64,000 nt of DNA, from IMG/VR virus record IMGVR_UViG_3300017917_003143, positions 124,001 to 188,000 of that record, one strand, 5' to 3'. Of the stretch, positions 26,745-45,547 are shown piece by piece. The position numbers were made by a program, and so were the translations under genes. The stretch's first letter is position 1. Each line of letters opens with the position of its first letter. Under the pieces are notes generated by a model. It did no database searches. It saw only the letters and a program-made list of their open reading frames with translations, and was not told where the DNA came from.

Positions 26745-27391
26745 TTAGAGACGTCGTCCGATACAAGGCACCCCCGGTATGGGGAGTGCTTTGCATTGAC
26801 GTTTGGCACCGAGATGGCGCAAATGAACAGTTTTACCAAACTGCCATAGACCATCTATCTAAATACAATGTACAGGCAGTGGTAAACTGCACCATGGACT
26901 TGCGTCTTGACTATCAAGACAAAAGTGTGTATAATACACTTAATCAATATCTTTGGACAGATGGTGGCATCGTAGAAGAGCAGAAACGCAGAGTACTATC
27001 AGAGTTGATACATTCTGCAGGACATCAAGAAACTTCCCATGTGTTGCATGAAAAATTATTTGATTCCAACACAGTGCATCTAAGTAGTAGATTCACTTTC
27101 CTTGAACACTGCCATACGTTTTTTCCAACAGTCAAAGATTGGATCATGTTAGGCAGTGCCTGGGGCATGTGTTTCCATAGAGGTCCTATGGGTGTTGACA
27201 CAGTGGTTGACGTTGGAGACATGAAGTTCCATATGTTTCCTGAGTGGAGTGTGCAGACTGAAACCGGTTCGCCGCCTACGCTACAACAACTGCATGATGA
27301 TTTTTATGTATGGGCCCCCATAGATGATGGTGGATATAGATTGATAACGAGAGCACAAAATCACAAATGGTTCGAGAACAAGACGATTTAA
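26741..27391 (+). CDS. isochorismatase/cysteine hydrolase-like protein
   Basis: VLCIDVW and LGSAWGMC patterns. Confidence 0.4.
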   Translation: MIRDVVRYKAPPVWGVLCIDVWHRDGANEQFYQTAIDHLSKYNVQAVVNCTMDLRLDYQDKSVYNTLNQYLWTDGGIVEEQKRRVLSELIHSAGHQETSHVLHEKLFDSNTVHLSSRFTFLEHCHTFFPTVKDWIMLGSAWGMCFHRGPMGVDTVVDVGDMKFHMFPEWSVQTETGSPPTLQQLHDDFYVWAPIDDGGYRLITRAQNHKWFENKTI

Positions 27392-28896
27392 CTTCTAAAC
27401 AAAGCGACTATGCTGTGTTCCTTCCGGCTATCAGCAGTTTCTATGCTGGCTATATTGGACGAGAGCGCCACGGTGTAGGACTTGATCCAGGCCGATTGCC
27501 ACAAGGCATCGGTGACATGGAAGCCATGAACTGGCTCGACCCACAGAAAGCATTGTTTCCCTATCGCTGGAGCCTGTATTCAGCAGGACACGCTAACTTG
27601 GATCTTACCAAGTTTGATGCCAAAGAGGACATGCTACGCAATCGAGATCCTAACACTGTTATGTTAGCCGACTCCGGCGGATTCCAGATTGCCAAGGGTG
27701 TATGGCCCGGTCGTTGGGCAGACCCCACAGATAAAAAAGCCGAAGCACAACGAGAAAAAGTGCTCAAATGGCAGATGGGCATAGCCACATACGGTATGAC
27801 CATGGATATCCCTACCTGGACATTCCGTGACCCCAAAGCCGCCGAAGCATCAGGTATCCATAGCTACGATGATGCTGTGACAGCGACACAATACAACAAC
27901 GAATATTGGATCAACAACCGTTATGGTGACACCAAGATCCTAAACGTGCTACAGGGCGGTAATCACGCCGAAGCAGATCACTGGTATGACTTGATGAAGC
28001 ACTACTGCGATCCTGCCAAGTATCCAGATCGACATTTCAACGGTTGGGGCATGGGAGGTCAGAACATGTGTGACGTACACTTGGTGCTGAAACGCTTGGT
28101 GACCTTGATCCACGATGGCTTGTTGGAAAAAGGTGTACATGATTGGATGCACTTCTTGGGCACATCAAAGCTGGAGTGGGCATGTTTGCTCACTGATGTA
28201 CAACGTGCCATCCGCAAGTATCATAACTCAAACTTCACTATCTCCTTTGATTGTGCATCGCCATTCTTGGCCACTGCCAACGGACAGATCTACACACAGT
28301 TGAGAACAGAAGATCGAGGCAAATGGTCTTACATGATGAGTCCCACCGCTGATGATAAAAAGTATGCCACCGATTCAAGATCTTTCCGTGATGCTGTGCT
28401 ACAAGATCGGATACATGACATTTTTGAAGACAGTCCAATTTCATCTAGGATGGCTATCAAGGATGTGTGCATATACAAACCGGGCGATCTAAACAAAATC
28501 GGTAAAGAAGGAAAAACCTCTTGGGACTCATTCTCTTATGCTCTAATGATGGGCCATAATGTTTGGCACCATATCCGGGCAGTACAAGAAGCAAATCGGA
28601 GATATGACCAAGGTTTAGTGCCCGGAATGCTTGTACAAGAAACCTTTGATCGTGTATACTTTAGAGACTTAGTAGATACAATCTTCAAACAGCAAGATCG
28701 AGCAAAGAGTTTGAGCATCATTGACAACAATTCTAAATTTTGGGATCAGATCATTGGCACACGTGGGTTCACTGGCAAGAAAACTACCAACGCTCATACC
28801 CAATACAACAACTTGTTCGAAGTCGATGACGAAGAAACCGAAACAGAAGAATTTGACGAATCATTGTTAGATCAACTGGAGAATCAAAATGTATGA
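27367..28896 (+). CDS. dpdA: tRNA-guanine transglycosylase-like protein (DpdA-like)
   Basis: DSGGFQ (27670-27687), MTMD, VLQGG, HFLG, SFDCASP. Confidence 0.85.
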   Translation: MVREQDDLTSKQSDYAVFLPAISSFYAGYIGRERHGVGLDPGRLPQGIGDMEAMNWLDPQKALFPYRWSLYSAGHANLDLTKFDAKEDMLRNRDPNTVMLADSGGFQIAKGVWPGRWADPTDKKAEAQREKVLKWQMGIATYGMTMDIPTWTFRDPKAAEASGIHSYDDAVTATQYNNEYWINNRYGDTKILNVLQGGNHAEADHWYDLMKHYCDPAKYPDRHFNGWGMGGQNMCDVHLVLKRLVTLIHDGLLEKGVHDWMHFLGTSKLEWACLLTDVQRAIRKYHNSNFTISFDCASPFLATANGQIYTQLRTEDRGKWSYMMSPTADDKKYATDSRSFRDAVLQDRIHDIFEDSPISSRMAIKDVCIYKPGDLNKIGKEGKTSWDSFSYALMMGHNVWHHIRAVQEANRRYDQGLVPGMLVQETFDRVYFRDLVDTIFKQQDRAKSLSIIDNNSKFWDQIIGTRGFTGKKTTNAHTQYNNLFEVDDEETETEEFDESLLDQLENQNV

Positions 28897-29074
28897 ATCT
28901 CGCATCAAGCATCTTGAAGAAGCACACCATGCCTTGGACAAACAGATCAAAGGTCTGGAACTCACAGGTGTTTTTGAAGATGAACGCTTGCATGAACTCA
29001 AAAAACTCAAGCTCAAACTAAAAGACGACATCGAATCTTTGCGCCGTAAACAACAAGAAGAAAATGAAAACTGA
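28889..29074 (+). CDS. DUF465/YdcH-like coiled-coil protein
   Basis: LKKLKLKLKDDI. Confidence 0.6.
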   Translation: MYESRIKHLEEAHHALDKQIKGLELTGVFEDERLHELKKLKLKLKDDIESLRRKQQEENEN

Positions 29075-29453
29075 TCTCGATCAACTGCTGTGTGAGAAAT
29101 ATCCTAAAATCTTTGCCGACAGGCACAAGACAATGACAGAAACCTGTATGTGTTGGGGCTTTGAGCACGGAGACGGTTGGTACAACATCATCGATCAACT
29201 ATGCTCCAACATCCAACATCACATTGATTGGAAAGAAAAGCAAGGACATGTTGTACCTCAAGTAGTGGCTGAACAGGTCAAAGAAAAGTTTGGCACACTA
29301 CGATTTTATTATCGTGGCGGCGATGATGCTATTGACGGTATGGTGCGTATGGCCGAATCCATGAGTGGTGTGACTTGTGAAGAGTGCGGAGCACCAGGCA
29401 CCACAGGCGGTCAAGGTTGGATCTCAACTCTTTGTGAAACTCATAGGAAATAA
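29064..29453 (+). CDS. conserved phage protein with CxxC
   Basis: QVKEKFGTLRFYY...CEECG. Confidence 0.7.
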   Translation: MKTDLDQLLCEKYPKIFADRHKTMTETCMCWGFEHGDGWYNIIDQLCSNIQHHIDWKEKQGHVVPQVVAEQVKEKFGTLRFYYRGGDDAIDGMVRMAESMSGVTCEECGAPGTTGGQGWISTLCETHRK

Positions 29454-29454
29454 C

Positions 29455-29970
29455 ATGGATAGACCCGGACACGAAACTGTTAAGTTTTTTATTGGTACTG
29501 AAGTAGAGCATACTCCAGCGTTTGGTCTTAAAACCTTGTTCGTGGTGGGTGTACATGATCACGACACTATCATGGACATAGCATTAGCCAATGATTGCAC
29601 ACATATCTATTTTGGTGCCAACCAGAGTTTTCCTCGACTGCCAGTTAATGATGCCGAAGGGTGGCGTCAGTGGGAAACCATGATCGATCAATGCTTGGAC
29701 GGAGGATTCTTGTGTACCTTGGATCTTGATGTATCCTGTGCCGAAGGCTTGCTGGAATCATTCCTGGTTGAAAAAAATAACTTTATTCCCATGCTGTCGG
29801 TCAAGCTCCCTTATATCCGGCAGTTCAATTACAATGCCACACTGAAGATCGATGACCGTGATTTCCAAGCTACCAATCCTGGAGTCTGGTGCCACAGTCT
29901 ACAAGATTTACAAAAAAGGTCAGTATTCACTGACTGGTCTAAATACACCCAAGACAAGGTAATAGAATAA
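29455..29970 (+). CDS. hypothetical protein in dpdA cluster
   Basis: ATG 29455 right after upstream stop. Confidence 0.7.
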   Translation: MDRPGHETVKFFIGTEVEHTPAFGLKTLFVVGVHDHDTIMDIALANDCTHIYFGANQSFPRLPVNDAEGWRQWETMIDQCLDGGFLCTLDLDVSCAEGLLESFLVEKNNFIPMLSVKLPYIRQFNYNATLKIDDRDFQATNPGVWCHSLQDLQKRSVFTDWSKYTQDKVIE

Positions 29971-30488
29971 TGGCACAACTATATCGTATCACACCGCTGG
30001 AAAAAAAGTCAATGGAATATTTCGTTGACGTGTTTGAGCGTCGAGAGGACGGTAGCATCCGTGGATTCCAAGTCACCGAAACCTGGCGTTGGGGTCAAGC
30101 GTTCCGTGAACTCGACGATCCTGTGTATGAAACAGAAATGGACCGTGTGCATTGCCGACCTGAAATTGGTTGGGGGTGCGAGCTTGACGATCTCTGTGCT
30201 GTCTGGGTAGAGTTCGACGAAGATGAGTTTACCGAAGAAGAAATGGACGAAATCCGCAGTATCCTGAATTGGGAGTCTGAAGACGAAGATGGACGTTGTG
30301 GCACTGCTTGGTTATACGATGGCGATCACAATTGGGAAATCGAAGATGATCATGTTGCTGTTTTGGGCCCAGTAAAGATTGACCTTATCGACGAAGATTC
30401 GTATAATGAGATTATTGAAGAAAATGTAAAACCTACCAAACTGGAACCATCCACTGGATGGCCGTTTAAGCCCAAGGAATCAGAATGA
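29970..30488 (+). CDS. acidic hypothetical protein
   Basis: 172 aa coupled ORF. Confidence 0.7.
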   Translation: MAQLYRITPLEKKSMEYFVDVFERREDGSIRGFQVTETWRWGQAFRELDDPVYETEMDRVHCRPEIGWGCELDDLCAVWVEFDEDEFTEEEMDEIRSILNWESEDEDGRCGTAWLYDGDHNWEIEDDHVAVLGPVKIDLIDEDSYNEIIEENVKPTKLEPSTGWPFKPKESE

Positions 30489-30934
30489 ATCAAGAACAAA
30501 GAGCCACAGTAGACCGTATCATAGAATCAGCAGATCGCAAGATCTGGGTCACATTCCGTAGAGAAGGCATCCATAAATATCCTGCGGCGCTGACGGATCC
30601 TGCGCTGGCCACAGGAGATGAATATGATGTATCGTTTTTGGGTTATCCTCATCGCCACATCTTTCATTTCAGGGTGTGGATCGATGTGTTCCACAATGAT
30701 CGGGACATCGAGTTCATCCAGTTCAAACGATGGATCGAGTCGCTGTATAATGGTCAAGGTTCCGTTTTAAGCCTTGATTACAAGTCTTGCGAAATGATCG
30801 CAGACGATCTGTATCTACAAATAGCCGGTCGTTATCCAGGCCGTGCTGTGTGGATTGAAGTAGCCGAAGATGGTGAGAACGGCTGCCTCATTAAGTATGA
30901 AACTCACCGTCCCTATAATTCAATCGTTATCTAA
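30485..30934 (+). CDS. QueD-like T-fold protein, DpdL-like (putative CDG decarboxylase)
   Basis: LGYPHRHIF = LxxxHRHxF (30638-30664); SCEMIA; EDGENG. Confidence 0.7.
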   Translation: MNQEQRATVDRIIESADRKIWVTFRREGIHKYPAALTDPALATGDEYDVSFLGYPHRHIFHFRVWIDVFHNDRDIEFIQFKRWIESLYNGQGSVLSLDYKSCEMIADDLYLQIAGRYPGRAVWIEVAEDGENGCLIKYETHRPYNSIVI

Positions 30935-30945
30935 AGGAAATCATC

Positions 30946-31215
30946 ATGGGCCGAACCTTGTTCAAACCCAATCCTCGCAGTCGTCAGGTCTGGGAAGACC
31001 TCGATCGTTATCTCAACTTTTGTGTGGACTATGGCTATCGCTATGATCCAGCAGATCTCTATAACAACCGGAGTTATCCATTCCAGCAGTTCCGTAAATT
31101 AGAAGCTGGCAAGGATCCTAAAGACATGTGGACTGAAGACAGCCGCAGATTTGCAGGCTATCGTCCAGATTTCAAGCGTGACGATCGCCGCCCTCGTGGA
31201 GATCGCCGTGCGTAA
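30946..31215 (+). CDS. hypothetical protein
   Basis: 89 aa, SD AAGGA. Confidence 0.7.
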   Translation: MGRTLFKPNPRSRQVWEDLDRYLNFCVDYGYRYDPADLYNNRSYPFQQFRKLEAGKDPKDMWTEDSRRFAGYRPDFKRDDRRPRGDRRA

Positions 31216-32401
31216 ACTATACTACATGGGCCTTGAGTCATACGAGGCTCGTTATACACTACAACTCACAGAATGGAATCGACGTGTTTTTGACCGCCGT
31301 GGCCTAGATGTTGTGTATGTGCCTGGATCAACTATTGACAATACCAAGAGTATTTCAGTAGGTCAGGTTTTAGACGCACACGGTCGCAGTTATTTTGGCA
31401 TGAGCCAGATGATGAATCTTGTACAGATGATGCGAAATGGAGAGGTCACAAATGAAGATGTCATTTATTTCGAAGATATGTTCCAGCCCGGTATCGAGAG
31501 CTTACCTTACATTATGGATCAGATCCCTGCAAATGATCGCCCTCGCATTTACGTTCGCTGTCTTGCTCAATCCATTGATCCTGATGATTTCGTACATGTA
31601 TGGGGTATGGCGAAATGGATGGGACTCTACGAACAAATGGTTAACGAGTTTGTTACAGGAGTTCTCGCCACAAACGAAGAGATGGTTGCTCATATGCGGA
31701 TTGCTGGATGGACTGCTCCTATATACAATATTAGTGGTCTAGCATTTGGCAAAGATGAAGTTCTCAGTCGAGTACAACTTCCTACTCCTTTTGAACAAAG
31801 ACCCAAGCGTGTGGGTTTTGCCGCGAGATTCGATCAAGAAAAGCAACCAGGATTCTTCATGGACTTGGTAGAAGAATATCAAAAGGTCTACCCAGATGTA
31901 CAGTTTGCTATCTATCAGGGCGGACCATTGCGTTCGAACAATCCTGAATACATCGATCGCGCTCGTCGATTAGAGTCCGAAGGTAAACTTTTGATTTTTG
32001 AAAATCTAAGCAAGAACGAATACTACCATCATCTGGCACACAACACTCGAGTGTTGTTTAACTGTGCCTTGCAAGACTGGGTTTCAAACACTGTCAGCGA
32101 AGCAGATACCTTGGGCTGTAATGTGCTGTATCCTGCTTATCGTAGTTTCCCAGAAACCTTTGCCAATGATCCTGATCGTTTGTATATTCCTTGGAGCGAA
32201 GACGATGCCTTCAACAAGTTGACAAATCTCTTGCGCACTCCACATCACAACATGGGATTGATTTCTGAATGGAACAATCGAACCATCGATCGTATCGTAG
32301 ATATCATCGAAGGCAATGGTGAACAATGGAATCGTAGCGGTAATCGTTACAGAGATCACGTTCCATACGCCAAATACCCAGTGGTCAAGATTGAAGAATG
32401 A
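31208..32401 (+). CDS. GT-B fold glycosyltransferase
   Basis: ARFDQEKQP; SEADTLGCNVLYP; likely GTG start 31208. Confidence 0.75.
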   Translation: MRKLYYMGLESYEARYTLQLTEWNRRVFDRRGLDVVYVPGSTIDNTKSISVGQVLDAHGRSYFGMSQMMNLVQMMRNGEVTNEDVIYFEDMFQPGIESLPYIMDQIPANDRPRIYVRCLAQSIDPDDFVHVWGMAKWMGLYEQMVNEFVTGVLATNEEMVAHMRIAGWTAPIYNISGLAFGKDEVLSRVQLPTPFEQRPKRVGFAARFDQEKQPGFFMDLVEEYQKVYPDVQFAIYQGGPLRSNNPEYIDRARRLESEGKLLIFENLSKNEYYHHLAHNTRVLFNCALQDWVSNTVSEADTLGCNVLYPAYRSFPETFANDPDRLYIPWSEDDAFNKLTNLLRTPHHNMGLISEWNNRTIDRIVDIIEGNGEQWNRSGNRYRDHVPYAKYPVVKIEE

Positions 32402-33351
32402 GTAGAATAATTGTAACAGGCGCAGGTGGATACATCGGAGGCCAGACAGTATTGAAACTGTTAGATCAAGGTCATAGTGTATATGCAGTTGATCAAACAC
32501 TTCCGCCACCTCATCTAATGGACGTCGGATGCAAATGGCTCACAGGTGACTTTGCCGGAGAAGTATTTTTAAGCTCTATCAAAAGTTTCAATCCAGAAGC
32601 CATCATCCATTGCGCCGGGACCAGTCTAGTAGGCCCTAGTGTAACCAATCCAATGTTGTACTATGACAATAACTTTGTCAAAACTAAAACAATGTTGGAT
32701 TACTTGATCCAAAACAAACTCACTGACATTCGTGTGATTTTTAGTTCTTCAGCGGCTACATATGGAGAACCGATAATGACTCCGTGCCAAGAAGAAGATC
32801 CAGCATTGCCGATCAGTCCTTATGGTGAAAGCAAACTCATGATCGAAATGATGATGAAAGCCTACGCCAATGCTTACGACTTGGATTTTGTTGCCTTCCG
32901 TTACTTCAATGCTTGCGGTGCTGATAGCCAAGCTCGTCATGGGCAAGCACCAGGTGCCACGCATATCATTGCTCGGGTACTTGAAAGTATTAGAGACGGC
33001 AAAGATTTTACTTTGTATGGCGATAACTATCCCACTCCTGATGGAACATGTATAAGAGATTACATACACGTGGAAGACATCGCTAATGCACACATCATGG
33101 CGATAAACTCGTCCGTTCCTGCAGGTGTTTATAACCTTGGCACGAATCAAGGCGCCAGCAATCGAGAAATCATTGCCATGTCTGAAAAAGTAACAGGACA
33201 ACAGGTTGATCTTGCAGTGGGTCCTATCCGTGCTGGAGATCCTGCTGTGCTCACTGCGTCAGCTGAACGATTTAACTCTATCAGTGGGTGGGCACCACAG
33301 TTTAATCTCGAAGACATGGTCCGACATGCCTGGACTTGGTATGTTCGATAA
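32398..33351 (+). CDS. galE: UDP-glucose 4-epimerase
   Basis: TGAGGYIG, SSSAATYG, YGESK, FRYFNACG, RDYIHVED. Confidence 0.92.
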   Translation: MSRIIVTGAGGYIGGQTVLKLLDQGHSVYAVDQTLPPPHLMDVGCKWLTGDFAGEVFLSSIKSFNPEAIIHCAGTSLVGPSVTNPMLYYDNNFVKTKTMLDYLIQNKLTDIRVIFSSSAATYGEPIMTPCQEEDPALPISPYGESKLMIEMMMKAYANAYDLDFVAFRYFNACGADSQARHGQAPGATHIIARVLESIRDGKDFTLYGDNYPTPDGTCIRDYIHVEDIANAHIMAINSSVPAGVYNLGTNQGASNREIIAMSEKVTGQQVDLAVGPIRAGDPAVLTASAERFNSISGWAPQFNLEDMVRHAWTWYVR

Positions 33352-33919
33352 GATACTAAAGTTTGAAAATGAGTTGGCAGAGTACACAGGTGCTCCCTAT
33401 GCCATCATGACTGACTGCTGTACACATGCCATCGAACTGTGTTTGCGGCATGACAAGATCAGAGAATGCCAGTTCACTGCTTATACATATCTTTCAATAC
33501 CCATGCTCATGCACAAGTTGGGCATAGAGTATCAATTGATAGATCAGACTTGGACTGGCGAATATCATTTTATCAATACCAGAGTCTGGGATAGTGCTCG
33601 CAGATTAGAAAGAGGAATGTATCGCCCTGGATCCATGCAGTGCTTGAGCTTTGGTTACGGAAAACCCCTGGAGATTGGCCGTGGCGGAGCGATATTGTTG
33701 GATGATCAACGAGCTTACGAAATCATGATAAAGCAACGCTATGATGGGCGAGACTTGTCTATCATGCCCTGGCAAGATCAGCGAGAATTCAGTGTTGGAT
33801 ATCATTACAAACCCACCATCGAAGAAGCCGTGCGAGGTTCAGAATTATTGCCTCTGGTCAATGAGGAACCTAAATATGTACAGTACCCAGACTGTAGAAA
33901 TTTTATAATTAAGGATTAA
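33341..33919 (+). CDS. short DegT/DnrJ-type PLP aminotransferase
   Basis: CTHAIEL, DSA, SFGYGKPLEIGRGGAI; 192 aa only. Confidence 0.7.
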   Translation: MFDKILKFENELAEYTGAPYAIMTDCCTHAIELCLRHDKIRECQFTAYTYLSIPMLMHKLGIEYQLIDQTWTGEYHFINTRVWDSARRLERGMYRPGSMQCLSFGYGKPLEIGRGGAILLDDQRAYEIMIKQRYDGRDLSIMPWQDQREFSVGYHYKPTIEEAVRGSELLPLVNEEPKYVQYPDCRNFIIKD

Positions 33920-33921
33920 AA

Positions 33922-34521: not shown

Positions 34522-35355
34522 TTGACAACATTTACATCAGAAGATCTAGAAAATTCTAAAAAATTAGTAGCAGAAGCACCATACCATCCCGGCTATGAAG
34601 ATGCAGTGATAGACAATGTCCTTGTCGGAGCAGAGCAACAAGGCGATGACGACAAAAATTATCAAGAAGCCTATCTCGGTGATGCTATCCGTTTCAAGAT
34701 GAAGCGTGATCGCAAACGTTTCTGGGCAGGAGACAACATCAGCGACTATGTCAGCGAAGAAGATAAAAAAATCTTGATCGACGAAGCCGCAGAGGCGTTT
34801 GAACTGGTTCTTGATCGTTTGCTGATCGATCGTGAAAACGACCCCAACTCCAAAGGCACAGCACGACGCTTGGCCAAGATGTACTTCAATGAAATAATGG
34901 CAGGACGTTATGACCCAGCACCCAGTGCCACAGCATTTCCAAATGATTCGGAGGACCGTTACGAAGGTATGTTGGTTGTCCGTAGTGAGCTTCGCAGTAT
35001 GTGTAGCCATCATCACCAGCCCGTTAGTGGTGTTGCTTATATTGGTATTATTGCCGCTCATAAACTTATCGGTCTATCAAAGTACACACGCATCGCACAG
35101 TGGTGTGCCCGACGTGGTACTCTCCAGGAGGAACTTGCTAATGATATTTGCAGGGAAATCAGCAAAGCAACCGACAGTCAAAACGTAGGGGTGTATATCC
35201 AAGCAATACATGGTTGCTGTGAGAATCGTGGTATCATGGCACACTCAAGTCTTACACAGACCACTGTGCTCACAGGAGTATTCAAAACAGATCCTGCTGT
35301 GAAAAAAGAGTTCATGGATAATATCAAACTGCAACAAGAGTTTGCACCACGATGA
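34522..35355 (+). CDS. folE: GTP cyclohydrolase I
   Basis: SMCSHHHQP, GLSK, QEEL, HGCCENRG; TTG start with GGAG. Confidence 0.93.
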   Translation: MTTFTSEDLENSKKLVAEAPYHPGYEDAVIDNVLVGAEQQGDDDKNYQEAYLGDAIRFKMKRDRKRFWAGDNISDYVSEEDKKILIDEAAEAFELVLDRLLIDRENDPNSKGTARRLAKMYFNEIMAGRYDPAPSATAFPNDSEDRYEGMLVVRSELRSMCSHHHQPVSGVAYIGIIAAHKLIGLSKYTRIAQWCARRGTLQEELANDICREISKATDSQNVGVYIQAIHGCCENRGIMAHSSLTQTTVLTGVFKTDPAVKKEFMDNIKLQQEFAPR

Positions 35356-38005: not shown

Positions 38006-38006
38006 T

Positions 38007-38387
38007 ATGACAGCAACACTAAAACAAGCCCAAGAACAAGGCATCGCTCCCTGGGACGATGTTTACTTCGAAGACAAAACACTTTGGATTTTCCGAGATC
38101 GGTATCCAGTGAGCCCAGGGCATTTGCTCTTTGTCCCTAAGATCAACAACGACGATAACATCCTGGACTGTTTCCGGTTGGCTCGTAGATACGGTGAATG
38201 GGCAGTACTCAAAGGCGAAGCTGATGGTTACAATGTTGGAATCAACTCAGGTGAGGCAGGCGGACAGACTGTGATGTATCCGCACGTACACATGATTCCT
38301 CGACGGCACGGCGACTGTGAAGATCCTGTGGGCGGTGTGCGTAATGTGATCCCAGGACAAGGAAATTATCGTAAATGGAAATCTTGA
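38007..38387 (+). CDS. HIT family hydrolase
   Basis: PVSPGHLLFVPK, GQTVMYPHVHMIPR. Confidence 0.88.
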   Translation: MTATLKQAQEQGIAPWDDVYFEDKTLWIFRDRYPVSPGHLLFVPKINNDDNILDCFRLARRYGEWAVLKGEADGYNVGINSGEAGGQTVMYPHVHMIPRRHGDCEDPVGGVRNVIPGQGNYRKWKS

Positions 38388-38617: not shown

Positions 38618-38642
38618 CCTATGCTATAATCTAACATAGGAG
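38618..38642 (+). promoter_or_regulatory. queD extended -10 (TGCTATAAT) inside an SD-occluding hairpin
   Basis: CCTATG 38618-23 / CATAGG 38635-40; SD AGGAG 38638-42. Confidence 0.5.
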
Positions 38643-38649
38643 AATTAAC

Positions 38650-39189
38650 ATGGCAAAATATCTTTCTACAAAAACATATGGCAACGATCGTGGACTATCA
38701 TGCTGTTTCCGCCAATGGCGTTCAACACATAGTCACTGCTCATTGCTACATGGATATTCCATCGGTATCAAACTAATCTTTGAAAGTGAAACACTAGACG
38801 ACCGTAATTGGGTCATGGACTTCGGTGGACTCAAAGCATTCAAAGAATGGAGCGAATACATGTTCGATCACACACTGGTCATTGCTGAAGATGATCCTCA
38901 TCGTGAAATGTTTGAAAAAATGGCCGAGCTTGGTTTACAAGATCAAGGCGGAGTATGTGACATTCGTATTGTGCCAGCTGTAGGTTGTGAAAAGTTTAGT
39001 GAACTGGCTTACAAAACTATGGAAAATATTCTCCGAGCATTCCAAGCAGGCAATTCTTGGTTCCTTGTAGCACAAGATGGAATTACCTTAAAAGAATTCA
39101 ATTGCCGTTACCCTGTTGGTCAAGGTGTCAAGTTACGTTCTGTAGAAGTATTCGAACACAACGCAAACTCAGCAGTCTACGAAGGTTAA
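38650..39189 (+). CDS. queD: 6-carboxy-5,6,7,8-tetrahydropterin synthase
   Basis: CSLLHGY, MDFGG, FDH, E..ANSA; SD AGGAG. Confidence 0.9.
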   Translation: MAKYLSTKTYGNDRGLSCCFRQWRSTHSHCSLLHGYSIGIKLIFESETLDDRNWVMDFGGLKAFKEWSEYMFDHTLVIAEDDPHREMFEKMAELGLQDQGGVCDIRIVPAVGCEKFSELAYKTMENILRAFQAGNSWFLVAQDGITLKEFNCRYPVGQGVKLRSVEVFEHNANSAVYEG

Positions 39190-39191
39190 TC

Positions 39192-41573: not shown

Positions 41574-42295
41574 AAAACTATCTATTCAAAAGTTTGTTCC
41601 AAGTACGCGATCCAAACTGGCATTTCAAAGACCGCAGTGGCGAACAAGATCTACATAAAAAATATGTAGAGATGCATCAAATTTCCGTTGGCAGTTACAC
41701 ACGTCATCTCAAAGGCAACTGGGAACTAAAATTCATACAAGGCACGGTTGACAACATCAATGATGCGTTCAAACGAACCTTTAGAGAAATTTACGACCTG
41801 TGGCGGCAAGGCAACACAAACATCTTTTATACAGATCCTGATACCATTGCTATCAAAGACATTGATCCTTGGCAAATATCTGATCAGTTTATGATGTTTA
41901 ATTTTACAGATCCTAAGAGTTTGGGAACCAACAATCAATACGGTCGCAAGTTTCCACACTTTTTCAATGCTGGTGTAAGATTCTTCCCTGCAGGCATGGA
42001 ACAGCGGATCTGGGACATTGGGCTAGAAATGCTTGACAACTGGGAAGAAGGCACATATAACACAGAACAAACCATACTCAATGCCATGCTTTGGGATCAA
42101 GGAGTCACCTTAGATCAAGTGTTGCGCCCCGAATGGGCATACCAAGCGCAATGGTTGCCTAATCAAGCACCGCTGTGGGTACAGGATACATGGAATGGTG
42201 TTGATATCAATCGAAGCTTGATCATACACACCCATAGCAGTAGAGACATCGATGAGAAGCTGGCCTTCATGAAACAACTGTCTGGACAGGCATGA
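41570..42295 (+). CDS. nucleotide-diphospho-sugar transferase (GT-A)
   Basis: FYTDPD, FNAGV, EQTILN. Confidence 0.6.
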   Translation: MKNYLFKSLFQVRDPNWHFKDRSGEQDLHKKYVEMHQISVGSYTRHLKGNWELKFIQGTVDNINDAFKRTFREIYDLWRQGNTNIFYTDPDTIAIKDIDPWQISDQFMMFNFTDPKSLGTNNQYGRKFPHFFNAGVRFFPAGMEQRIWDIGLEMLDNWEEGTYNTEQTILNAMLWDQGVTLDQVLRPEWAYQAQWLPNQAPLWVQDTWNGVDINRSLIIHTHSSRDIDEKLAFMKQLSGQA

Positions 42296-42897
42296 AAGAT
42301 ATATTCACCAACATCGTTGAGCACGGACAGTGGAGAGCAGGCCACACAGTGTGTGGTAATGGTAGCACCATGCACTACACTGATTATCTGCGCCAACACC
42401 TCAGCGCATTCCTAGAGAAGCACCAAATCAGTTCGATGTTTGATGCACCTTGTGGGGATTACACATGGATGAGCCAAATCCAGCTTTCAGCTAACTTACG
42501 TTATATCGGCGGGGACATTGTTGACAGTTTGATTGAAAAAAACAAGCAATCTTATCCAACTGTAGATTTTCGTGTAGTTGACATAGCCCAAGATGATTTA
42601 CCTGATGTAGATTTGCTTTTTTGTCGAGATTGTTTGATACATTTTAGTCATGCTGATATACGCAGAGTGTTTGAAAATATCTCTCGTAGCAGTATAAAAT
42701 ATGTGTTGATGACTAACTATGCTCATTCAGACAACTCAGACATTGCCACCGGAGGATTCCGTGGAGTTAATTTTCTTCAGGCACCGTACGAATTTGAAGC
42801 ACCCATAGACAGTATCGAAGATTGGGTACCAGGGTATGCACCAAGAAGTATGTGCCTTTGGAACCGTGAAACCATTATTGGATATTTAGAAAAATGA
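42292..42897 (+). CDS. class I SAM methyltransferase
   Basis: FDAPCGD, YIGGDIV, CRDCLIH. Confidence 0.8.
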   Translation: MKDIFTNIVEHGQWRAGHTVCGNGSTMHYTDYLRQHLSAFLEKHQISSMFDAPCGDYTWMSQIQLSANLRYIGGDIVDSLIEKNKQSYPTVDFRVVDIAQDDLPDVDLLFCRDCLIHFSHADIRRVFENISRSSIKYVLMTNYAHSDNSDIATGGFRGVNFLQAPYEFEAPIDSIEDWVPGYAPRSMCLWNRETIIGYLEK

Positions 42898-43472
42898 AAA
42901 AAGTTTATGTAAGCTGGACCGATGTACAAAGACAAACACAAGAAATCATAAGACAGATGTATCTAGATGAGTGGCGCCCAGACTACATCGTAGGTATCAC
43001 TCGAGGAGGCTTGGTACCGGCCAATCTTATCAGTCAATATCTTGACGTACCAATGTATGCTCTGCAAGTACGATTAAGAGATGGCGGCGATGAAGATTGT
43101 GAAAGCAATCTCTGGATGAGCGAAGAAGCATTTGGATATCACAGAACCGATGACTTGCCTGGGGCAAGCAATCCTACCCTTAGGAAAAATATTCTCATCG
43201 TAGACGATATAAACGACTCAGGCGCCACTATAAACTGGATACGCCAAGACTGGCAAACAACTTGCTTGCCCGACGACCCGGCCTGGGCCAATATCTGGGG
43301 CAACAATGTACGTATAGCCACACTGTATGACAACGAGACCAGTGCCGCGGAAATTTATGTAAATTACACAGCCGAAACAGTAAACAAATTCGAAGATCCG
43401 CAGTGGATAGTATTCCCCTGGGAAGAGTGGTGGAAGAAATGGCATCCCAATGAAGAACACATCAAGTCCTGA
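42894..43472 (+). CDS. purine phosphoribosyltransferase (Gpt-like)
   Basis: GITRGGLVP, LIVDDINDSGAT, WIVFPWE. Confidence 0.85.
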   Translation: MKKVYVSWTDVQRQTQEIIRQMYLDEWRPDYIVGITRGGLVPANLISQYLDVPMYALQVRLRDGGDEDCESNLWMSEEAFGYHRTDDLPGASNPTLRKNILIVDDINDSGATINWIRQDWQTTCLPDDPAWANIWGNNVRIATLYDNETSAAEIYVNYTAETVNKFEDPQWIVFPWEEWWKKWHPNEEHIKS

Positions 43473-43941
43473 AATACTTTTGGTCATGGTGCATGTTTGG
43501 CAGGACATGCCCGAATTAGAAAACATACGCTGGCAAGAATTTAGCCAATTGATAGTAGACAAGGCCAACAGTATCAATTGGCCAAAAATTTGGCAATTTG
43601 ATTTTATCGATAAAAATACATTCAATTCGTTGAAACAAAACAAGATCGTTCAAAACAGCCAGGTGATGCCTCAAGGAAAAGTACCACACACCGATATCGT
43701 ATATGGACCCAATGATTGGATCTCTACTTCAGATTCGCAAACTGCCCAGATCATAAAATCGATAAATCCCACGATAGTCATCTTCGGCGGGCTACACAAA
43801 GATCTATGTGTGACCGGAGTAAAACTGGCTGTAGAGGATGATCAAAGAGAATATTTTGTTAGTGACAGACTGGCGTACACTTGGAAAGAAACCGCAGCCG
43901 CTGTTTACAAGGATTGGGGAAATGATACAACCGTTACGTGA
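43450..43941 (+). CDS. isochorismatase-like (possibly degenerate) protein
   Basis: IVIFGGLHKDLCV. Confidence 0.35.
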   Translation: MKNTSSPEILLVMVHVWQDMPELENIRWQEFSQLIVDKANSINWPKIWQFDFIDKNTFNSLKQNKIVQNSQVMPQGKVPHTDIVYGPNDWISTSDSQTAQIIKSINPTIVIFGGLHKDLCVTGVKLAVEDDQREYFVSDRLAYTWKETAAAVYKDWGNDTTVT

Positions 43942-44347
43942 TGACTTGATGGTACAGCAACAGCTACCAAAGATAACCGATTGGACGCATCGTTGGTTAC
44001 ACATGGTGGCTGTGATAATGCTCAATCAAACAGGACGCAAGCCCGTGAAAACAGTGTTTCCAGTATTTGCCGAACGCTGGCCACATCCACTGAATTTCCT
44101 GGAAGCTACCGAAACTGAAGTCAAAGATGTGATCTGGCCCTTGGGCATGGTCAATGTTCGGTACAATAGGTTAAGAAGAATGACCCAAGACTACTTTACT
44201 TGGGACGGAGAAGATGCTACAATGTTATATGGTATTGGCAAATATGGGTCGGACAGCTATGAGATATTCTTCAAACAGAACTATGCTGTTGAGCCCACAG
44301 ACAAAGAACTAAAAAGGTACTTAGATGAAGAAGTATTCGTTTCATGA
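43922..44347 (+). CDS. MBD4-like HhH-GPD DNA glycosylase
   Basis: IMLNQT, PLG...R, LYGIGKYGSDSYEIF. Confidence 0.85.
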   Translation: MIQPLRDDLMVQQQLPKITDWTHRWLHMVAVIMLNQTGRKPVKTVFPVFAERWPHPLNFLEATETEVKDVIWPLGMVNVRYNRLRRMTQDYFTWDGEDATMLYGIGKYGSDSYEIFFKQNYAVEPTDKELKRYLDEEVFVS

Positions 44348-44666
44348 TGTTGGTGGCGAGATAGTCAAAGACAACGAAGTTTATTTGTTGAAAGACAATC
44401 ACGATCTAAATAATCTCGTGCTGAGCTCTACCAAGCTCTACAGGCATCAACAAACTCGTGGGCACAGGCACCCTGGACAAGAAGAAGTATATTTCTTTAT
44501 ACAAGGCACAGGAAAGATGATCGTAGGCGAAGAAACCGATGAACCTTTTTCTGTCAGTGCTGGAGATATTGTGTTGATCCCTGATGGTGCATTTCATCGT
44601 GTGATCAACGATGGAGAGACACATTTAATTTTTAATTGCGTATTTGATGGCAAAAGGAATCATTGA
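44325..44666 (+). CDS. cupin domain protein
   Basis: GHRHPGQEEVY...G; GDIVLIP.G.FH. Confidence 0.85.
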   Translation: MKKYSFHDVGGEIVKDNEVYLLKDNHDLNNLVLSSTKLYRHQQTRGHRHPGQEEVYFFIQGTGKMIVGEETDEPFSVSAGDIVLIPDGAFHRVINDGETHLIFNCVFDGKRNH

Positions 44667-45547
44667 TGGAAAAGATTACATACACAGAGATATTTTACAG
44701 CATCCAAGGTGAAGGACGTTGGGCAGGTGTGCCCAGTGTATTCTTCCGCACATATGGATGCAACTTCCGCTGTCGTAAGTTTGGTCGTCCGCGAGACGAA
44801 CAGCTGGAAGGACACAATCCTGAAGTGATCGAGATCATCAAGAACATCGATCAATACAAAAAGTTTGAAGACTTGCCTTTGGCCAAAACTGGCTGTGACA
44901 GCTATGCCAGCATTTACCCTGAGTTCAAGCGATTCAACGAACAAGACAGCGTAGAAACTATCGTAGACAAGATGCATGCTCTCATACCCAACAATCGTTG
45001 GGATCAAGGCATAGGTGATGACGTGCATCTCGTGATTACAGGTGGTGAGCCATTGCTGGGTTATCAGCAACTGTATCCTGATCTCATCGAATACTGTCGT
45101 CGAGCTGGTCTACGCAATCTAACATTCGAGACCAACGGCAGCCAGCCTTTGCATCCAGAAGTGTATGAATATTTGTTTGAAGAGTTTACACGTCATGGCA
45201 GAGACTACGACAAGCTGACATTCAGTGTGAGCCCAAAACTACCTTGCTCGGGCGAAGCATGGGATGTAGCAATCAATCCCAAAGTGGTCAAGAGCTATGA
45301 AATGGTAGGCATGACTTATCTCAAGTTTGTTGTGGCCACACCACAGGATGTGGCAGATGCTGAACGTGCTGTGGAAGAATATCGAGAAGCCGGTTTTGGC
45401 GGCCCTGTGTATCTCATGCCCATGGGCGGTGTACCTGATGTATACAATCTCAACACACAGCAAGTGGCAACATTGGCCATGGAACGTGGATGGCGTTACA
45501 GTCCTAGACTACAAGTGGATATCTGGCGTAATGCTTGGGGTACCTGA
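44663..45547 (+). CDS. queE: 7-carboxy-7-deazaguanine synthase (radical SAM)
   Basis: SIQGEG, FRTYGCNFRC...CDS, ITGGEP, ETNG, SPK, YSPRLQ. Confidence 0.9.
   Translation: MMEKITYTEIFYSIQGEGRWAGVPSVFFRTYGCNFRCRKFGRPRDEQLEGHNPEVIEIIKNIDQYKKFEDLPLAKTGCDSYASIYPEFKRFNEQDSVETIVDKMHALIPNNRWDQGIGDDVHLVITGGEPLLGYQQLYPDLIEYCRRAGLRNLTFETNGSQPLHPEVYEYLFEEFTRHGRDYDKLTFSVSPKLPCSGEAWDVAINPKVVKSYEMVGMTYLKFVVATPQDVADAERAVEEYREAGFGGPVYLMPMGGVPDVYNLNTQQVATLAMERGWRYSPRLQVDIWRNAWGT

What the first reader, a model, noticed from the sequence alone, without database searches (positions are those of the whole stretch)
27367..45547. 7-deazaguanine DNA modification pathway of the DpdL type, with no QueC in the window
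Seen: a TGT-like gene two genes after the clamp, an LxxxHRHxF T-fold protein, folE, queD and queE. Known: FolE-QueD-QueE make CDG; phage DpdA inserts deazaguanines into DNA; DpdL-type QueD paralogs are linked to 7-deazaguanine (dDG). Inference: genomic G is partly or fully replaced by dDG or dCDG for anti-restriction. The genes are scattered over 18 kb among sugar enzymes rather than in a compact operon.
Basis: partly seen in the sequence, partly recalled or inferred. Interest (0 to 1): 0.75.

Follow-up and report, generated by a model that had tools for sequence, protein, structure and literature searches.

The report
Phage 7-deazaguanine DNA modification genes
A 344-kb pond phage carries the QueC-less "DpdL-type" genes for replacing guanine in its DNA with a 7-deazaguanine, using a previously unnamed relative of the DpdA2 DNA transglycosylases, and a glycosyltransferase that travels with these genes hints at an extra sugar.

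Summary
QueC, QueF and canonical TGT are absent from the window and from the whole 343.6-kb genome. QueC was also sought in five relatives, one a complete genome, and is absent there too.

This is the known DpdL-type 7-deazaguanine pathway (Hutinet 2023), so the core is not new.
1. **Transglycosylase.** It matches no Pfam, PHROG, NCBIfam or PADLOC model. Its predicted fold is TGT, the three catalytic Asp are invariant, and its nearest known kin are the validated DpdA2 enzymes, not DpdA3. Its cultured homologue is in phage PA5oct, whose DNA resists G-site restriction enzymes.
2. **Sugar genes.** They are probably not bystanders. A GT4 glycosyltransferase sits beside DpdL or DpdA in 7 of 10 DpdL phage lineages. 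In a database-wide search it was found in no phage lacking DpdL. Here a bona fide GalE follows it.
3. **Phosphoribosyltransferase.** A 6-oxopurine enzyme flanks queE in three lineages.

The final base (dDG, dCDG or a sugar-bearing derivative) and the extent of replacement remain untested.

The parts
27367..28896 (+). DpdA-like DNA guanine transglycosylase (509 aa): a divergent relative of DpdA2 with a TGT (beta/alpha)8 barrel and a disordered acidic C-terminal tail (residues about 466-509)
   Evidence: AF2 model pLDDT 89.9, pTM 0.90. The 50 listed Foldseek PDB matches are all Z. mobilis tRNA-guanine transglycosylase, best E 3.5e-7. hhalign against a DpdA2 profile gives 98.1%, E 1e-13, aligning the DSGGxQ, MxxD-xP, HxLG and ISxD motifs. 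D102, D147 and D295 are invariant in 61 family members.
29455..29970 (+). Conserved 171-aa protein of unknown function (p197). Its homologue in phage ACP17 is the gene just upstream of ACP17 DpdA2.
   Evidence: BLASTP 1e-14 and jackhmmer 2e-79 to ACP17 ASD50402. Present in 78 of 80 related contigs between the transglycosylase and DpdL. No family match; the Atlas gives leads only.
30485..30934 (+). DpdL (149 aa): QueD-paralogous T-fold protein, the proposed 7-carboxy-7-deazaguanine decarboxylase
   Evidence: Motif LGYPHRHIF at residue 52. 56.6% identical to ACP17 DpdL and 35% to phiST DpdL. PHROG 17812, E 9.5e-36.
30946..31215 (+). Small conserved ORF (89 aa) between DpdL and the glycosyltransferase. 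Its stop codon overlaps the GTG start of the next gene.
   Evidence: Found in 73 of 76 related contigs at the same offset. GTGCGTAA overlap read. No family match.
31208..32401 (+). GT-B / GT4-type glycosyltransferase (about 397 aa, probable GTG start at 31208), genomically linked to DpdL and DpdA in many phages
   Evidence: Homologues lie beside DpdL or DpdA in BUCT-ZZ01 (68% identity), X1/BUDD, BCSR5, PA5oct, ACP17 and Phosso. The profile hits GT4 enzymes in the PDB at E 1.8e-5. Atlas neighbours carry PF00534. All Foldseek matches are GT-B, but the model is poor, pLDDT 59.7.
32398..33351 (+). UDP-glucose 4-epimerase GalE (317 aa), a likely supplier of the sugar donor for the adjacent glycosyltransferase
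   Evidence: NCBIfam TIGR01179 294.4 bits, above the 262.3 cut-off. Pfam Epimerase 5e-48. Present after the GT in 57 of 59 related contigs.
33326..33919 (+). Short DegT/DnrJ-like protein (about 197 aa, roughly half the length of a normal sugar aminotransferase); function uncertain
   Evidence: Pfam DegT_DnrJ_EryC1 2.2e-12, covering only profile positions 24-92 of 360. Only weak NCBIfam matches. Present in 53 of 59 related contigs.
34522..35355 (+). GTP cyclohydrolase I FolE (277 aa): first step, GTP to dihydroneopterin triphosphate
   Evidence: Pfam PF01227 134 bits. PHROG 2197, 3.5e-44. 37% identical to phiST FolE.
38007..38387 (+). HIT-family (HinT-like) nucleotide hydrolase between FolE and QueD; possible accessory gene, role unknown
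   Evidence: Pfam HIT 2e-11. NCBIfam HinT 2e-13, below cut-off. Present in 26 of 41 related contigs.
38650..39189 (+). QueD (6-carboxy-tetrahydropterin synthase, 179 aa) with a CxxxHGY variant of the CxxxHGH motif
   Evidence: Pfam PTPS 46.7 bits. PHROG QueD-like 6.5e-35. The same CxxLHGY variant occurs in the phiST, ACP17, ZZ01 and BCSR5 QueD proteins.
42894..43472 (+). 6-oxopurine (xanthine/guanine-type) phosphoribosyltransferase (192 aa) with the PRPP motif VDDINDSGAT
   Evidence: Pfam Pribosyltran 53 bits, above the 26.3 cut-off. PDB 1VDM purine PRT 5.3e-12. Homologues lie directly beside QueE in BUCT-ZZ01 and PA5oct.
43838..44347 (+). HhH-GPD-like protein (169 aa; DNA-glycosylase superfamily, below the Pfam cut-off) between the PRT and QueE; membership in the system uncertain
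   Evidence: Pfam HhH-GPD 25.0 bits against a cut-off of 26.2. No homologue found in the other DpdL phage clusters.
44325..44666 (+). Small cupin (113 aa) immediately upstream of QueE; membership uncertain
   Evidence: Pfam Cupin_2 4e-13. phiST also has a cupin near its QueD, but no sequence similarity was detected.
44663..45547 (+). QueE (7-carboxy-7-deazaguanine synthase, radical SAM, 294 aa) with about 40 aa inserted between the second and third cluster cysteines
   Evidence: PHROG QueE-like 3.5e-49. NCBIfam QueE models down to 1.8e-12, below their cut-offs. In the alignment C33, C37 and C78 match the CxxxCxxC of ACP17 QueE.

Best explanation
The region encodes a QueC-less, DpdL-type system that replaces guanine in the phage's own DNA with a 7-deazaguanine.

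**Inferred from well-characterised families.** FolE, QueD and QueE convert GTP to 7-carboxy-7-deazaguanine (CDG).

**Inferred from the literature's own proposal, never shown biochemically.** DpdL, a QueD paralogue whose catalytic Cys is replaced by Leu, removes the carboxyl group to give 7-deazaguanine.

**Shown here.** The 509-aa protein has a TGT barrel and keeps all three catalytic aspartates. Its nearest characterised relatives are the DpdA2 enzymes, which insert deazaguanines into DNA.

**Inferred.** That protein exchanges G in double-stranded phage DNA for the deazaguanine after replication, possibly only in some sequence contexts.

**Accessory genes, inferred from conserved linkage.**
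- The 6-oxopurine phosphoribosyltransferase beside QueE most simply salvages the guanine released by each exchange back into the GTP pool that feeds the pathway.
- The GT4 glycosyltransferase with its GalE may add a sugar to the base or its precursor.

The purpose would be protection from host restriction. The identity of the final base (dDG, or a decorated derivative) is open.
For: **Gene identities:**

**DpdL membership:** exact motif, and 35-57% identity to the two proteins named DpdL in PMC10516641.

**Transglycosylase:**
- Confident TGT-fold model.
- Invariant D102, D147 and D295, aligned to the E. coli Tgt motifs DSGGFQ, IFDE and MFDC.
- 98.1% hhalign probability to a DpdA2 profile that includes the experimentally validated nt-1 and VH7D enzymes.
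- Its family HMM scores all eight DpdA2 references above DpdA3, Tgt and DpdA1.

**No onward pathway:** no QueC, QueF or TGT model reaches its cut-off in the whole genome. QueC was also sought in five relatives, one a complete genome with terminal repeats, and is absent there.

**Conserved order:** PolB, clamp-like, transglycosylase, p197, DpdL, GT, GalE, FolE, QueD in 80 related viral contigs.

**Cultured relative:** PA5oct has the same transglycosylase (36% identity), GT, DpdL, PRT and QueE in one block. [quoted passage not shown]

**Location:** the transglycosylase sits beside the polymerase and the clamp-like gene, as DpdA1 does in phage 9g.
Against: - No chemistry was measured, and the only sequencing run that holds most of this stretch is kept as contigs only.
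- DpdL's decarboxylase activity has never been demonstrated. Co-expressing ACP17 or phiST dpdL with the cognate dpdA gave no dDG in E. coli.
- The transglycosylase is only about 18% identical to DpdA2 over 186 aligned columns and misses every curated model.
- The genome still avoids several G-containing palindromes strongly, which is not expected if every G were replaced and protected.
- A divergent AsnB/QueC-like PP-loop protein lies 4.4 kb beyond the window. It could in principle amidate CDG.
- A phosphoribosyltransferase in a QueC-less CDG pathway has a precedent that works at the nucleotide level.
Confidence: 0.7

Rival explanations
1. Nucleotide-level, pre-replicative route, as in tubercidin biosynthesis. 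The phosphoribosyltransferase joins CDG to PRPP. DpdL decarboxylates the base or the nucleotide. The 7-deaza-GMP is converted to 7-deaza-dGTP, and the phage PolB incorporates it. The TGT-fold protein would then play a secondary role, such as repair or patching, or a different one.
For: - A 6-oxopurine PRT lies beside QueE here and in BUCT-ZZ01 and PA5oct.
- In the QueC-less tubercidin pathway, the PRT TubE was shown to use CDG plus PRPP, with decarboxylation afterwards.
- dpdL plus dpdA alone gave no dDG in E. coli.
- A HIT nucleotide hydrolase is in the block, and a MazG is elsewhere in the genome.
Against: - The PRT was found in only 3 of the 10 DpdL neighbourhoods examined, whereas a DpdA-type gene accompanies DpdL in at least 8.
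- The transglycosylase keeps all catalytic residues under strong conservation.
- Guanine salvage explains the PRT equally well.
- No dedicated kinase or reductase for the analogue was identified.
Confidence: 0.12
2. The TGT-fold enzyme modifies tRNA rather than DNA. It would insert a 7-deazaguanine into the phage's own or the host's GUN-anticodon tRNAs to tune translation.
For: - The genome carries 32 tRNA genes just downstream of the window, including Asp(GUC), Asn(GUU) and His(GUG), the classical TGT substrates.
- The fold and catalytic residues are shared with tRNA-guanine transglycosylases.
Against: - The family profile scores every DpdA2 DNA enzyme above E. coli Tgt.
- PF01702 does not match.
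- The CxCxxC...H zinc motif of tRNA TGTs is absent: the protein has only five scattered Cys.
- The pathway stops before preQ0 and preQ1, the bases that tRNA enzymes use.
- The gene sits among replication genes.
- PA5oct DNA is itself restriction-resistant.
Confidence: 0.05
3. The genes make a free 7-deazapurine metabolite, such as a glycosylated base or a nucleoside of the huimycin or tubercidin type, used against the host or competitors rather than a DNA modification.
For: CDG-core genes combined with a PRT, a GT4 glycosyltransferase and methyltransferases resemble actinomycete 7-deazapurine gene clusters.
Against: - A conserved DpdA-type transglycosylase has no role in those pathways.
- The block is embedded in the replication module.
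- DpdL phages that have been analysed carry the base in DNA (phiST).
- PA5oct DNA behaves as modified.
Confidence: 0.04

Closest known systems
DpdL-type dDG system of Cellulophaga phage phiST (Hutinet et al. 2023, PMC10516641)
   Same: It has FolE, QueD (the same CxxxHGY variant), QueE and DpdL (LxxxHRHxF), no QueC, and a TGT-superfamily transglycosylase. The genes lie near the replicative polymerase.
   Different: - phiST uses the 259-aa DpdA3. The window's 509-aa enzyme shows only marginal similarity to it (hhalign 59%).
- phiST has a MazG and a P-loop ATPase in the cluster, and no GT4, GalE or PRT.
- phiST DNA has been measured, with dDG in place of dG. This phage's DNA has not.
DpdA2 + DpdL clusters of Acidovorax phage ACP17, Xanthomonas phage X1, Burkholderia phage BCSR5 and Synechococcus phage BUCT-ZZ01
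   Same: - They have DpdL, FolE, QueD and QueE, plus the same GT4 glycosyltransferase next to DpdA or DpdL.
- BUCT-ZZ01 also has the PRT beside QueE.
- ACP17 shares the p197 homologue upstream of its DpdA.
   Different: Their transglycosylase is a regular DpdA2, 30-37% identical to the nt-1 and VH7D enzymes. The window's enzyme is a distant sister: about 18% identity over the core, and reciprocal HMM hits only at 1e-3 to 1e-9 in small databases. None of these phages has a published DNA composition that I could find.
Pseudomonas jumbo phage PA5oct (Wroclawvirus) replication-module block
   Same: It has the same transglycosylase family (36% identity over 80% of the length) and the same order: PolB, clamp-like, transglycosylase, GT4, DpdL, then PRT and QueE. 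There is experimental evidence of a modified G.
   Different: PA5oct's cluster is compact. It has an epimerase-family fragment instead of a full GalE. Its DpdL reads HFH rather than HRH. The paper that reports its G modification names only QueE and a PTPS, not the transglycosylase, DpdL or GT.
Tubercidin and huimycin 7-deazapurine pathways of actinomycetes
   Same: - Tubercidin: QueC-less CDG core plus a phosphoribosyltransferase and a decarboxylase.
- Huimycin: a glycosyltransferase that puts a sugar on a nitrogen of a 7-deazapurine base.
   Different: Those pathways make free metabolites and have no transglycosylase. Their decarboxylase is a UbiD-family enzyme, not a T-fold protein.

Membership tests
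DpdL (proposed CDG decarboxylase, QueD paralogue) | Signature LxxxHRHxF replacing the CxxxHGH of QueD | tested here: met
   LGYPHRHIF at residue 52. Motif definition from PMC10516641.
DpdL (proposed CDG decarboxylase, QueD paralogue) | Sequence homology to the proteins named DpdL (phiST CGPG_00067, ACP17) | tested here: met
   56.6% identity, E 7e-46, to ACP17. 34-35% identity to phiST: tblastn against the phage database E 8e-11, pairwise BLASTP E 5e-18.
DpdL (proposed CDG decarboxylase, QueD paralogue) | Genomic context: a DpdA, FolE, QueD and QueE present, QueC absent | tested here: met
DpdL (proposed CDG decarboxylase, QueD paralogue) | Decarboxylation of CDG to 7-deazaguanine | not testable with these tools
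   The activity is unproven even for the founding members.
DpdA superfamily (DNA 7-deazaguanine transglycosylases) | TGT (beta/alpha)8-barrel fold | tested here: met
   Model pLDDT 89.9. All 50 listed Foldseek PDB matches are tRNA-guanine transglycosylase, probability 1.00.
DpdA superfamily (DNA 7-deazaguanine transglycosylases) | Catalytic aspartates, equivalent to Z. mobilis TGT D102, D156 and D280 | tested here: met
   D102, D147 and D295 are invariant in 61 sequences. They align to the DSGGFQ, IFDE and MFDC motifs of E. coli Tgt. The residue roles come from general knowledge of TGT.
DpdA2 subfamily | Recognisable sequence relationship to the validated DpdA2 enzymes (nt-1, VH7D) | tested here: inconclusive
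   - Profile-profile comparison gives 98.1%, E 1e-13, but only 186 columns at 18% identity.
- Pairwise BLASTP to ACP17 DpdA2 is only 2e-4.
- tblastn with ACP17 DpdA2 does not retrieve the PA5oct-type proteins.
- Best read as a sister group rather than a clear member.
DpdA3 subfamily | Homology to phiST CGPG_00065 | tested here: not met
   No BLASTP similarity. hhalign 59% over 82 columns. Lowest-ranked of the DpdA-type structure hits, E 7e-3.
DpdA1 subfamily | Homology to phage 9g DpdA | tested here: not met
   hhalign probability 0.4%. HMM score 0.4 bits.
Bacterial tRNA-guanine transglycosylase (Tgt) | Match to PF01702, and the CxCxxC...H zinc site | tested here: not met
   PF01702 has no hit in the protein or the genome. 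Only 2 of 61 family members reach even E 0.04. The five Cys are at 214, 235, 273, 296 and 368, with no CxCxxC.
DpdA superfamily (DNA 7-deazaguanine transglycosylases) | Base exchange on DNA rather than tRNA | not testable with these tools
   Only indirect support: gene neighbourhood, kinship to DpdA2, and the PA5oct phenotype.
QueE (7-carboxy-7-deazaguanine synthase) | Radical-SAM cysteine triad and a family-model match | tested here: met
   PHROG QueE-like 3.5e-49. C33, C37 and C78 align to the CxxxCxxC of ACP17 QueE, with an insertion of about 40 aa. NCBIfam QueE models match but fall below their curated cut-offs.
QueD (6-carboxytetrahydropterin synthase) | PTPS fold family plus the CxxxHGH motif | tested here: inconclusive
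   Pfam PTPS is above its cut-off, but the motif reads CSLLHGY. The same variant is in the QueD of phiST, which does make dDG.
GT4 (GT-B) nucleotide-sugar glycosyltransferases | Sequence or fold relationship to GT4 enzymes | tested here: met
   The profile hits PDB GT4 enzymes at E 1.8e-5. Atlas neighbours carry PF00534 and PF13692. All Foldseek matches are GT-B, from a low-confidence model. Pfam gives no hit for the single sequence.
GalE (UDP-glucose 4-epimerase) | Score above the curated equivalog cut-off | tested here: met
   TIGR01179 294.4 bits against a cut-off of 262.3.
6-oxopurine phosphoribosyltransferases | Type I PRT domain with a PRPP-binding loop | tested here: met
   PF00156 53 bits against a cut-off of 26.3. 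VDDINDSGAT aligns to the PRPP loop of 1VDM, E 5.3e-12. Base specificity is not testable here.

The most novel reading that the evidence does not exclude
In this phage and in the other DpdL phages that carry the linked GT4 gene (PA5oct, ACP17, X1, BCSR5, BUCT-ZZ01, Phosso), the final DNA base may not be plain 7-deazaguanine. It may be a sugar-bearing 7-deazaguanine. The conserved GT4, fed here by GalE, would glycosylate the deazapurine before or after DpdA inserts it. This would be a class of DNA hypermodification not yet described. It would also explain why dpdL plus dpdA alone failed to give dDG in E. coli.
Probability: 0.3. Interest if true: 0.85.

Novelty: new variant of a known kind. Interest (0 to 1): 0.55.

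Why it matters
7-deazaguanine DNA modifications are a major phage counter-measure to restriction and CRISPR, and the DpdL branch is the least understood. Its decarboxylase is unproven and its reconstitution failed.

- **Abundance.** The DpdL branch is carried by an abundant, uncultivated clade of roughly 340-350-kb phages. At least 599 IMG/VR contigs hold close DpdL relatives, and thousands of metagenomic proteins resemble the transglycosylase.
- **Blind spot in annotation.** Current domain libraries miss this transglycosylase family entirely, so surveys based on Pfam TGT or PADLOC DpdA models will undercount such systems.
- **Concrete candidates.** A GT4 glycosyltransferase and a purine phosphoribosyltransferase emerge as recurrent partners of DpdL. 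They are candidates for the 'unknown enzymes' missing from reconstitution experiments.
- **A testable system.** Cultured PA5oct has the same gene set and already shows a modified-G phenotype of unknown chemistry, so the questions raised here can be tested directly.

Tried and rejected
**Transglycosylase by sequence alone.**
- Single-sequence and profile searches of the 509-aa protein against PDB sequences found nothing.
- Pfam, PHROG, NCBIfam and PADLOC also found nothing.
- Only structure prediction and profile-profile comparison resolved it.
- DpdA3 and DpdA1 membership were rejected.

**QueC candidates.**
- The weak hit at C1:91637-92476 is NadE.
- The 401-aa ORF at C1:192378-193583 is an AsnB/QueC-like PP-loop protein with no homologue in cultured phages, including the DpdL phages. 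It is not a conserved part of the module, but I kept it as a caveat.

**Alternative acceptor for the glycosyltransferase.** No thymidylate-synthase-like hydroxymethylase is present, so a hydroxymethyl-pyrimidine acceptor is unlikely.

**Glycosyltransferase structure.**
- The permitted shallow alignment gave a poor model, pLDDT 59.7. I use it only to say 'GT-B fold'.
- No T4 beta-glucosyltransferase appeared among the top matches.

**Complex prediction.** Transglycosylase plus GT gave no answer. This is not evidence either way.

**Sequencing runs.**
- Four were listed, all kept as assembled contigs.
- Only one, from a pond metagenome, holds most of the stretch.
- No read-level signal of modification could be sought, and read laying was not used.

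**Restriction-site statistics.**
- Hexamer palindromes containing GA are not avoided (median O/E 1.00), while other G-containing ones are (0.88; p 0.016, uncorrected for eight tests).
- This is suggestive of context-specific modification but not significant after correction.

**Other checks.**
- Megablast of the region against cultured phages found no match.
- The clamp identity of the 243-aa protein could not be confirmed.

Full report
**Setting.** The window is bases 124001-188000 of a single 343,632-bp virus record that is rated 99% complete. One pond metagenome run holds 97% of the sampled words of this stretch; an estuary run holds 6%. In the region of the finding every gene is on the + strand. 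It lies directly downstream of a family-B DNA polymerase (22399-25059).

**Checking the observation.**
- FolE (34522-35355) and QueD (38650-39189) pass the Pfam cut-offs.
- QueE (44663-45547) is weak in Pfam but matches the PHROG QueE-like family at 3.5e-49 and five NCBIfam QueE models, all below their cut-offs.
- An alignment with other phage QueE proteins explains the weak Pfam hit. The three cluster cysteines are there (C33, C37, C78), but about 40 residues are inserted before the third.
- The 149-aa T-fold protein (30485-30934) carries LGYPHRHIF, which is exactly LxxxHRHxF. That motif defines DpdL in Hutinet et al. 2023 (PMC10516641).
- It is 56.6% identical to the ACP17 protein and 35% to the phiST protein that the paper names DpdL.
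- The window's QueD has CxxxHGY instead of CxxxHGH. So do the QueD proteins of phiST, ACP17, BUCT-ZZ01 and BCSR5.

**No QueC.**
- PF06508 gives only two sub-threshold hits in the whole genome.
- One is NadE.
- The other is a 401-aa AsnB/QueC-like PP-loop protein 4.4 kb beyond the window. It has no homologue in cultured phages.
- QueF and PF01702 TGT are also absent from the genome.
- Five related virus records were searched for QueC only, including one complete genome with terminal repeats. None has a hit above the cut-off.

**The TGT-like gene.** The 509-aa protein (27367-28896) matches nothing in Pfam, PHROGs, NCBIfam or PADLOC. It also matches nothing in PDB sequences, even as a 61-sequence profile. 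It belongs to a large family:
- more than 7,800 close metagenomic hits;
- 924 clusters at 50% identity.

In 61 diverse members, D102, S103, G105, D147, P149, H262, G265 and D295 are invariant. An AlphaFold model built on that alignment is confident (pLDDT 89.9, pTM 0.90). All 50 listed Foldseek matches in the PDB are Zymomonas tRNA-guanine transglycosylase (best E 3.5e-7, probability 1.00). Among viral models it matches:
- the Achromobacter phage Motura 'TGT';
- a Vibrio phage nt-1 protein;
- much more weakly, the phiST DpdA3.

To place it, I built a DpdA2 reference alignment from nt-1 and VH7D, both shown experimentally to insert preQ0 or preQ1 into DNA, plus ACP17, BUCT-ZZ01, X1, pf16, Moby and BCSR5.

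| Comparison with the window's family profile | Result |
|---|---|
| DpdA2 profile (8 sequences) | 98.1%, E 1e-13, 186 columns, 18% identity |
| nt-1 DpdA2, single sequence | 93% |
| E. coli Tgt, single sequence | 91% |
| phiST DpdA3, single sequence | 59% |
| Phage 9g DpdA1, single sequence | 0.4% |

The DpdA2 alignment runs through the motifs DSGGxQ, MxxD-xP, QG, HxLG and ISxD. The family's HMM scores all eight DpdA2 references (10-31 bits) above DpdA3 (7.3), Tgt (5.3) and DpdA1 (0.4).

The zinc motif of tRNA enzymes is absent. I read this protein as a DpdA-superfamily enzyme that is a distant sister of DpdA2. It is not the DpdA3 found with DpdL in phiST.

**Relatives with a phenotype.**
- By tblastn, the 509-aa protein has homologues in only three groups of cultured phages: the PA5oct-like Pseudomonas jumbo phages (36%), Sinorhizobium phage Phosso (27%) and one Vibrio phage (29%).
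- In PA5oct the order is PolB, clamp-like protein, small ORF, transglycosylase, GT-like, DpdL, three small ORFs including a PRT, then QueE.
- The same preprint reports that END nucleases which sense modified G restrict PA5oct.
- It suggests a modified G in GA and/or GG contexts, and it names only QueE and a PTPS as candidate genes (PMC12191111).
- The chemistry was not determined.

It is support by homology only.

**What else travels with DpdL.** I compared the DpdL neighbourhoods of ten phage lineages: this one, PA5oct, Phosso, ACP17, X1, BCSR5, BUCT-ZZ01, RHph_I1_18, Bakedbeans and phiST. I used BLAST clustering, jackhmmer and profiles.

| Gene family | Lineages where found, of 10 |
|---|---|
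| DpdL | 10 |
| QueE | 9 |
| FolE | 9 |
| GT-B glycosyltransferase homologous to window 31208-32401 | 7 |
| QueD | 6 |

*The glycosyltransferase.*
- In each of the seven lineages, the gene lies within a few genes of DpdL or the transglycosylase.
- A tblastn of the window's GT against 50,697 phage records returns six records from four lineages. Every one is also in the DpdL hit list.
- The PA5oct and Phosso copies were detected by pairwise and profile comparison.
- The protein is a GT4-type enzyme:
  - its profile finds GT4 structures in the PDB (E 1.8e-5);
  - its Atlas neighbours carry Glycos_transf_1;
  - even the poor model (pLDDT 59.7) matches only GT-B folds.
- Its probable GTG start overlaps the stop codon of the preceding small ORF.

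*Further sugar-related genes.*
- In this genome the GT is followed by a GalE that passes NCBIfam's equivalog cut-off, and then by a short DegT-like protein.
- BUCT-ZZ01 has a second GT4 in its cluster, and PA5oct has an epimerase-family fragment.

*The phosphoribosyltransferase.*
- A 6-oxopurine enzyme (42894-43472) has an intact PRPP loop and matches PDB 1VDM at 5e-12.
- It has homologues immediately beside QueE in BUCT-ZZ01 and PA5oct.

*p197.* This conserved protein corresponds to the gene just upstream of ACP17's DpdA2.

**Within the clade.** At least 599 IMG/VR contigs encode close DpdL relatives. In the 80 I fetched, the following order is kept:

PolB, methyltransferase-like, clamp-like, transglycosylase, p197, DpdL, p89, GT, GalE, DegT-like, FolE, (HIT), QueD, GT2.

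Six ORFs of this genome are absent from most of them: p216, p129, p172, p180, p224 and the subtilase.

**Mechanism.** The best-supported reading runs as follows.
1. FolE, QueD and QueE make CDG from GTP (established biochemistry of these families).
2. DpdL converts CDG to 7-deazaguanine. This is the literature's proposal and is unproven.
3. The DpdA2-like enzyme exchanges G in phage DNA for that base (inferred).
4. The PRT is most simply a salvage enzyme. It returns the released guanine to the GTP pool that feeds FolE (my inference).

The GT4 plus GalE suggest a further step that involves a sugar. Chemical precedent exists: HuiG in huimycin biosynthesis glycosylates a nitrogen of a free 7-deazapurine using UDP-GlcNAc. 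Hutinet et al. could not obtain dDG from ACP17 or phiST dpdL plus dpdA in E. coli. They suspected missing enzymes. The GT4 (ACP17) and the PRT are concrete candidates.

**Rivals.**
- *Nucleotide-level route.* It is modelled on tubercidin biosynthesis, where the PRT TubE joins CDG to PRPP in a QueC-less pathway and decarboxylation follows. It cannot be excluded. It is less economical, because the transglycosylase is conserved with intact catalytic residues and the PRT is present in only 3 of 10 neighbourhoods.
- *tRNA target.* The genome encodes tRNA-Asp, -Asn and -His with GUN anticodons, so this is conceivable. Kinship to DNA enzymes, the missing zinc motif, the truncated pathway and the PA5oct phenotype all argue against it.
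- *Free metabolite.* This is unlikely for the same reasons.

**An indirect look at the extent of modification.** The genome still strongly avoids some G-containing palindromes.

| Palindrome | Observed | Expected | Note |
|---|---|---|---|
| AGCGCT | 0 | 35 | avoided |
| GTGCAC | 5 | 44 | avoided |
| AAGCTT | 20 | 71 | avoided |
| TGCA | 1128 | 1782 | avoided, z -22 |
| GATC | 2390 | 2254 | not avoided |
| GAATTC | 81 | 69 | not avoided |
| GATATC | 184 | 172 | not avoided |
| AGATCT | 182 | 170 | not avoided |

Hexamer palindromes containing GA have a median O/E of 1.00, against 0.88 for other G-containing ones (p 0.016). Those containing GC are the most avoided (p 0.006). Neither figure is corrected for the eight tests run. 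This fits a context-dependent modification like the one proposed for PA5oct, but it is only suggestive.

**Verdict.** Three things go beyond the published picture:
- the unnamed DpdA2-related transglycosylase family;
- the recurrent GT4 and PRT partners of DpdL;
- the abundance of this gene set in an uncultivated jumbo-phage clade.

The identity of the base and its extent in DNA need mass spectrometry. PA5oct is the obvious place to do it.

Noticed in passing
genome C1:188959-208566 (starts 959 bases beyond the window's end): An array of 32 tRNA genes. It includes a CUA-anticodon tRNA that ARAGORN calls 'Pyl', a potential amber suppressor. It also includes Asp, Asn and His tRNAs with GUN anticodons.
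   Followed up: partly
genome C1:192378-193583 (outside the window): A 401-aa PP-loop protein that resembles asparagine-synthase and QueC-type ATP-pyrophosphatases only distantly. It is common in uncultivated viruses but has no homologue among 50,697 cultured phage records. Its substrate is unknown.
   Followed up: partly
whole genome; e.g. AGCGCT, GTGCAC, ATTAAT, AAGCTT, TGCA: Several palindromes are strongly avoided: AGCGCT 0 seen against 35 expected, ATTAAT 0 against 32, GTGCAC 5 against 44. GA-containing palindromes such as GATC and GAATTC are not avoided. This may reflect context-specific protection, or the host's restriction enzymes.
   Followed up: partly
window 36101-38005: A 634-aa subtilase (Peptidase_S8) sits between FolE and QueD. 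It is found in only 5 of 41 related contigs, so it looks like an insertion specific to this genome.
   Followed up: no
window 40042-42897 and 25056-26000: Three SAM-dependent methyltransferase-like genes lie in a row (40042-40830, 40830-41573, 42292-42897), separated by an unassigned 249-aa ORF (41546-42295). Another sits between PolB and the clamp-like gene. Their targets are unknown. The one beside PolB is conserved in position but only about 34% identical in relatives.
   Followed up: no
window 28762-28896 (residues about 466-509 of the transglycosylase): The transglycosylase ends in a disordered, very acidic tail (EVDDEETETEEFDESLLDQLENQNV). It is reminiscent of the tails that replication proteins use to dock on partners.
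   Followed up: no
L096 (Vibrio phage Bakedbeans) 11179-12360: The DpdL homologue is the C-terminal third of a 383-aa annotated protein, so DpdL may be fused to another domain in this phage.
   Followed up: no
L007 (Xanthomonas phage X1) 5365-6977 and L008 (Burkholderia phage BCSR5) 5915-7993: X1 and BCSR5 share three further genes just upstream of the GT4 in their DpdL clusters. The first is a PAPS-reductase-type PP-loop protein in X1.
   Followed up: no
genome C1:91637-92476 and C1:109796-109999 (outside the window): The phage encodes a NadE-type NAD synthase and a MazG pyrophosphohydrolase.
   Followed up: no
window 45775-46257: A DUF2452 protein lies about 230 bases downstream of QueE. PA5oct and Phosso share a different conserved gene with the window further downstream, at 47291-47722.
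   Followed up: no
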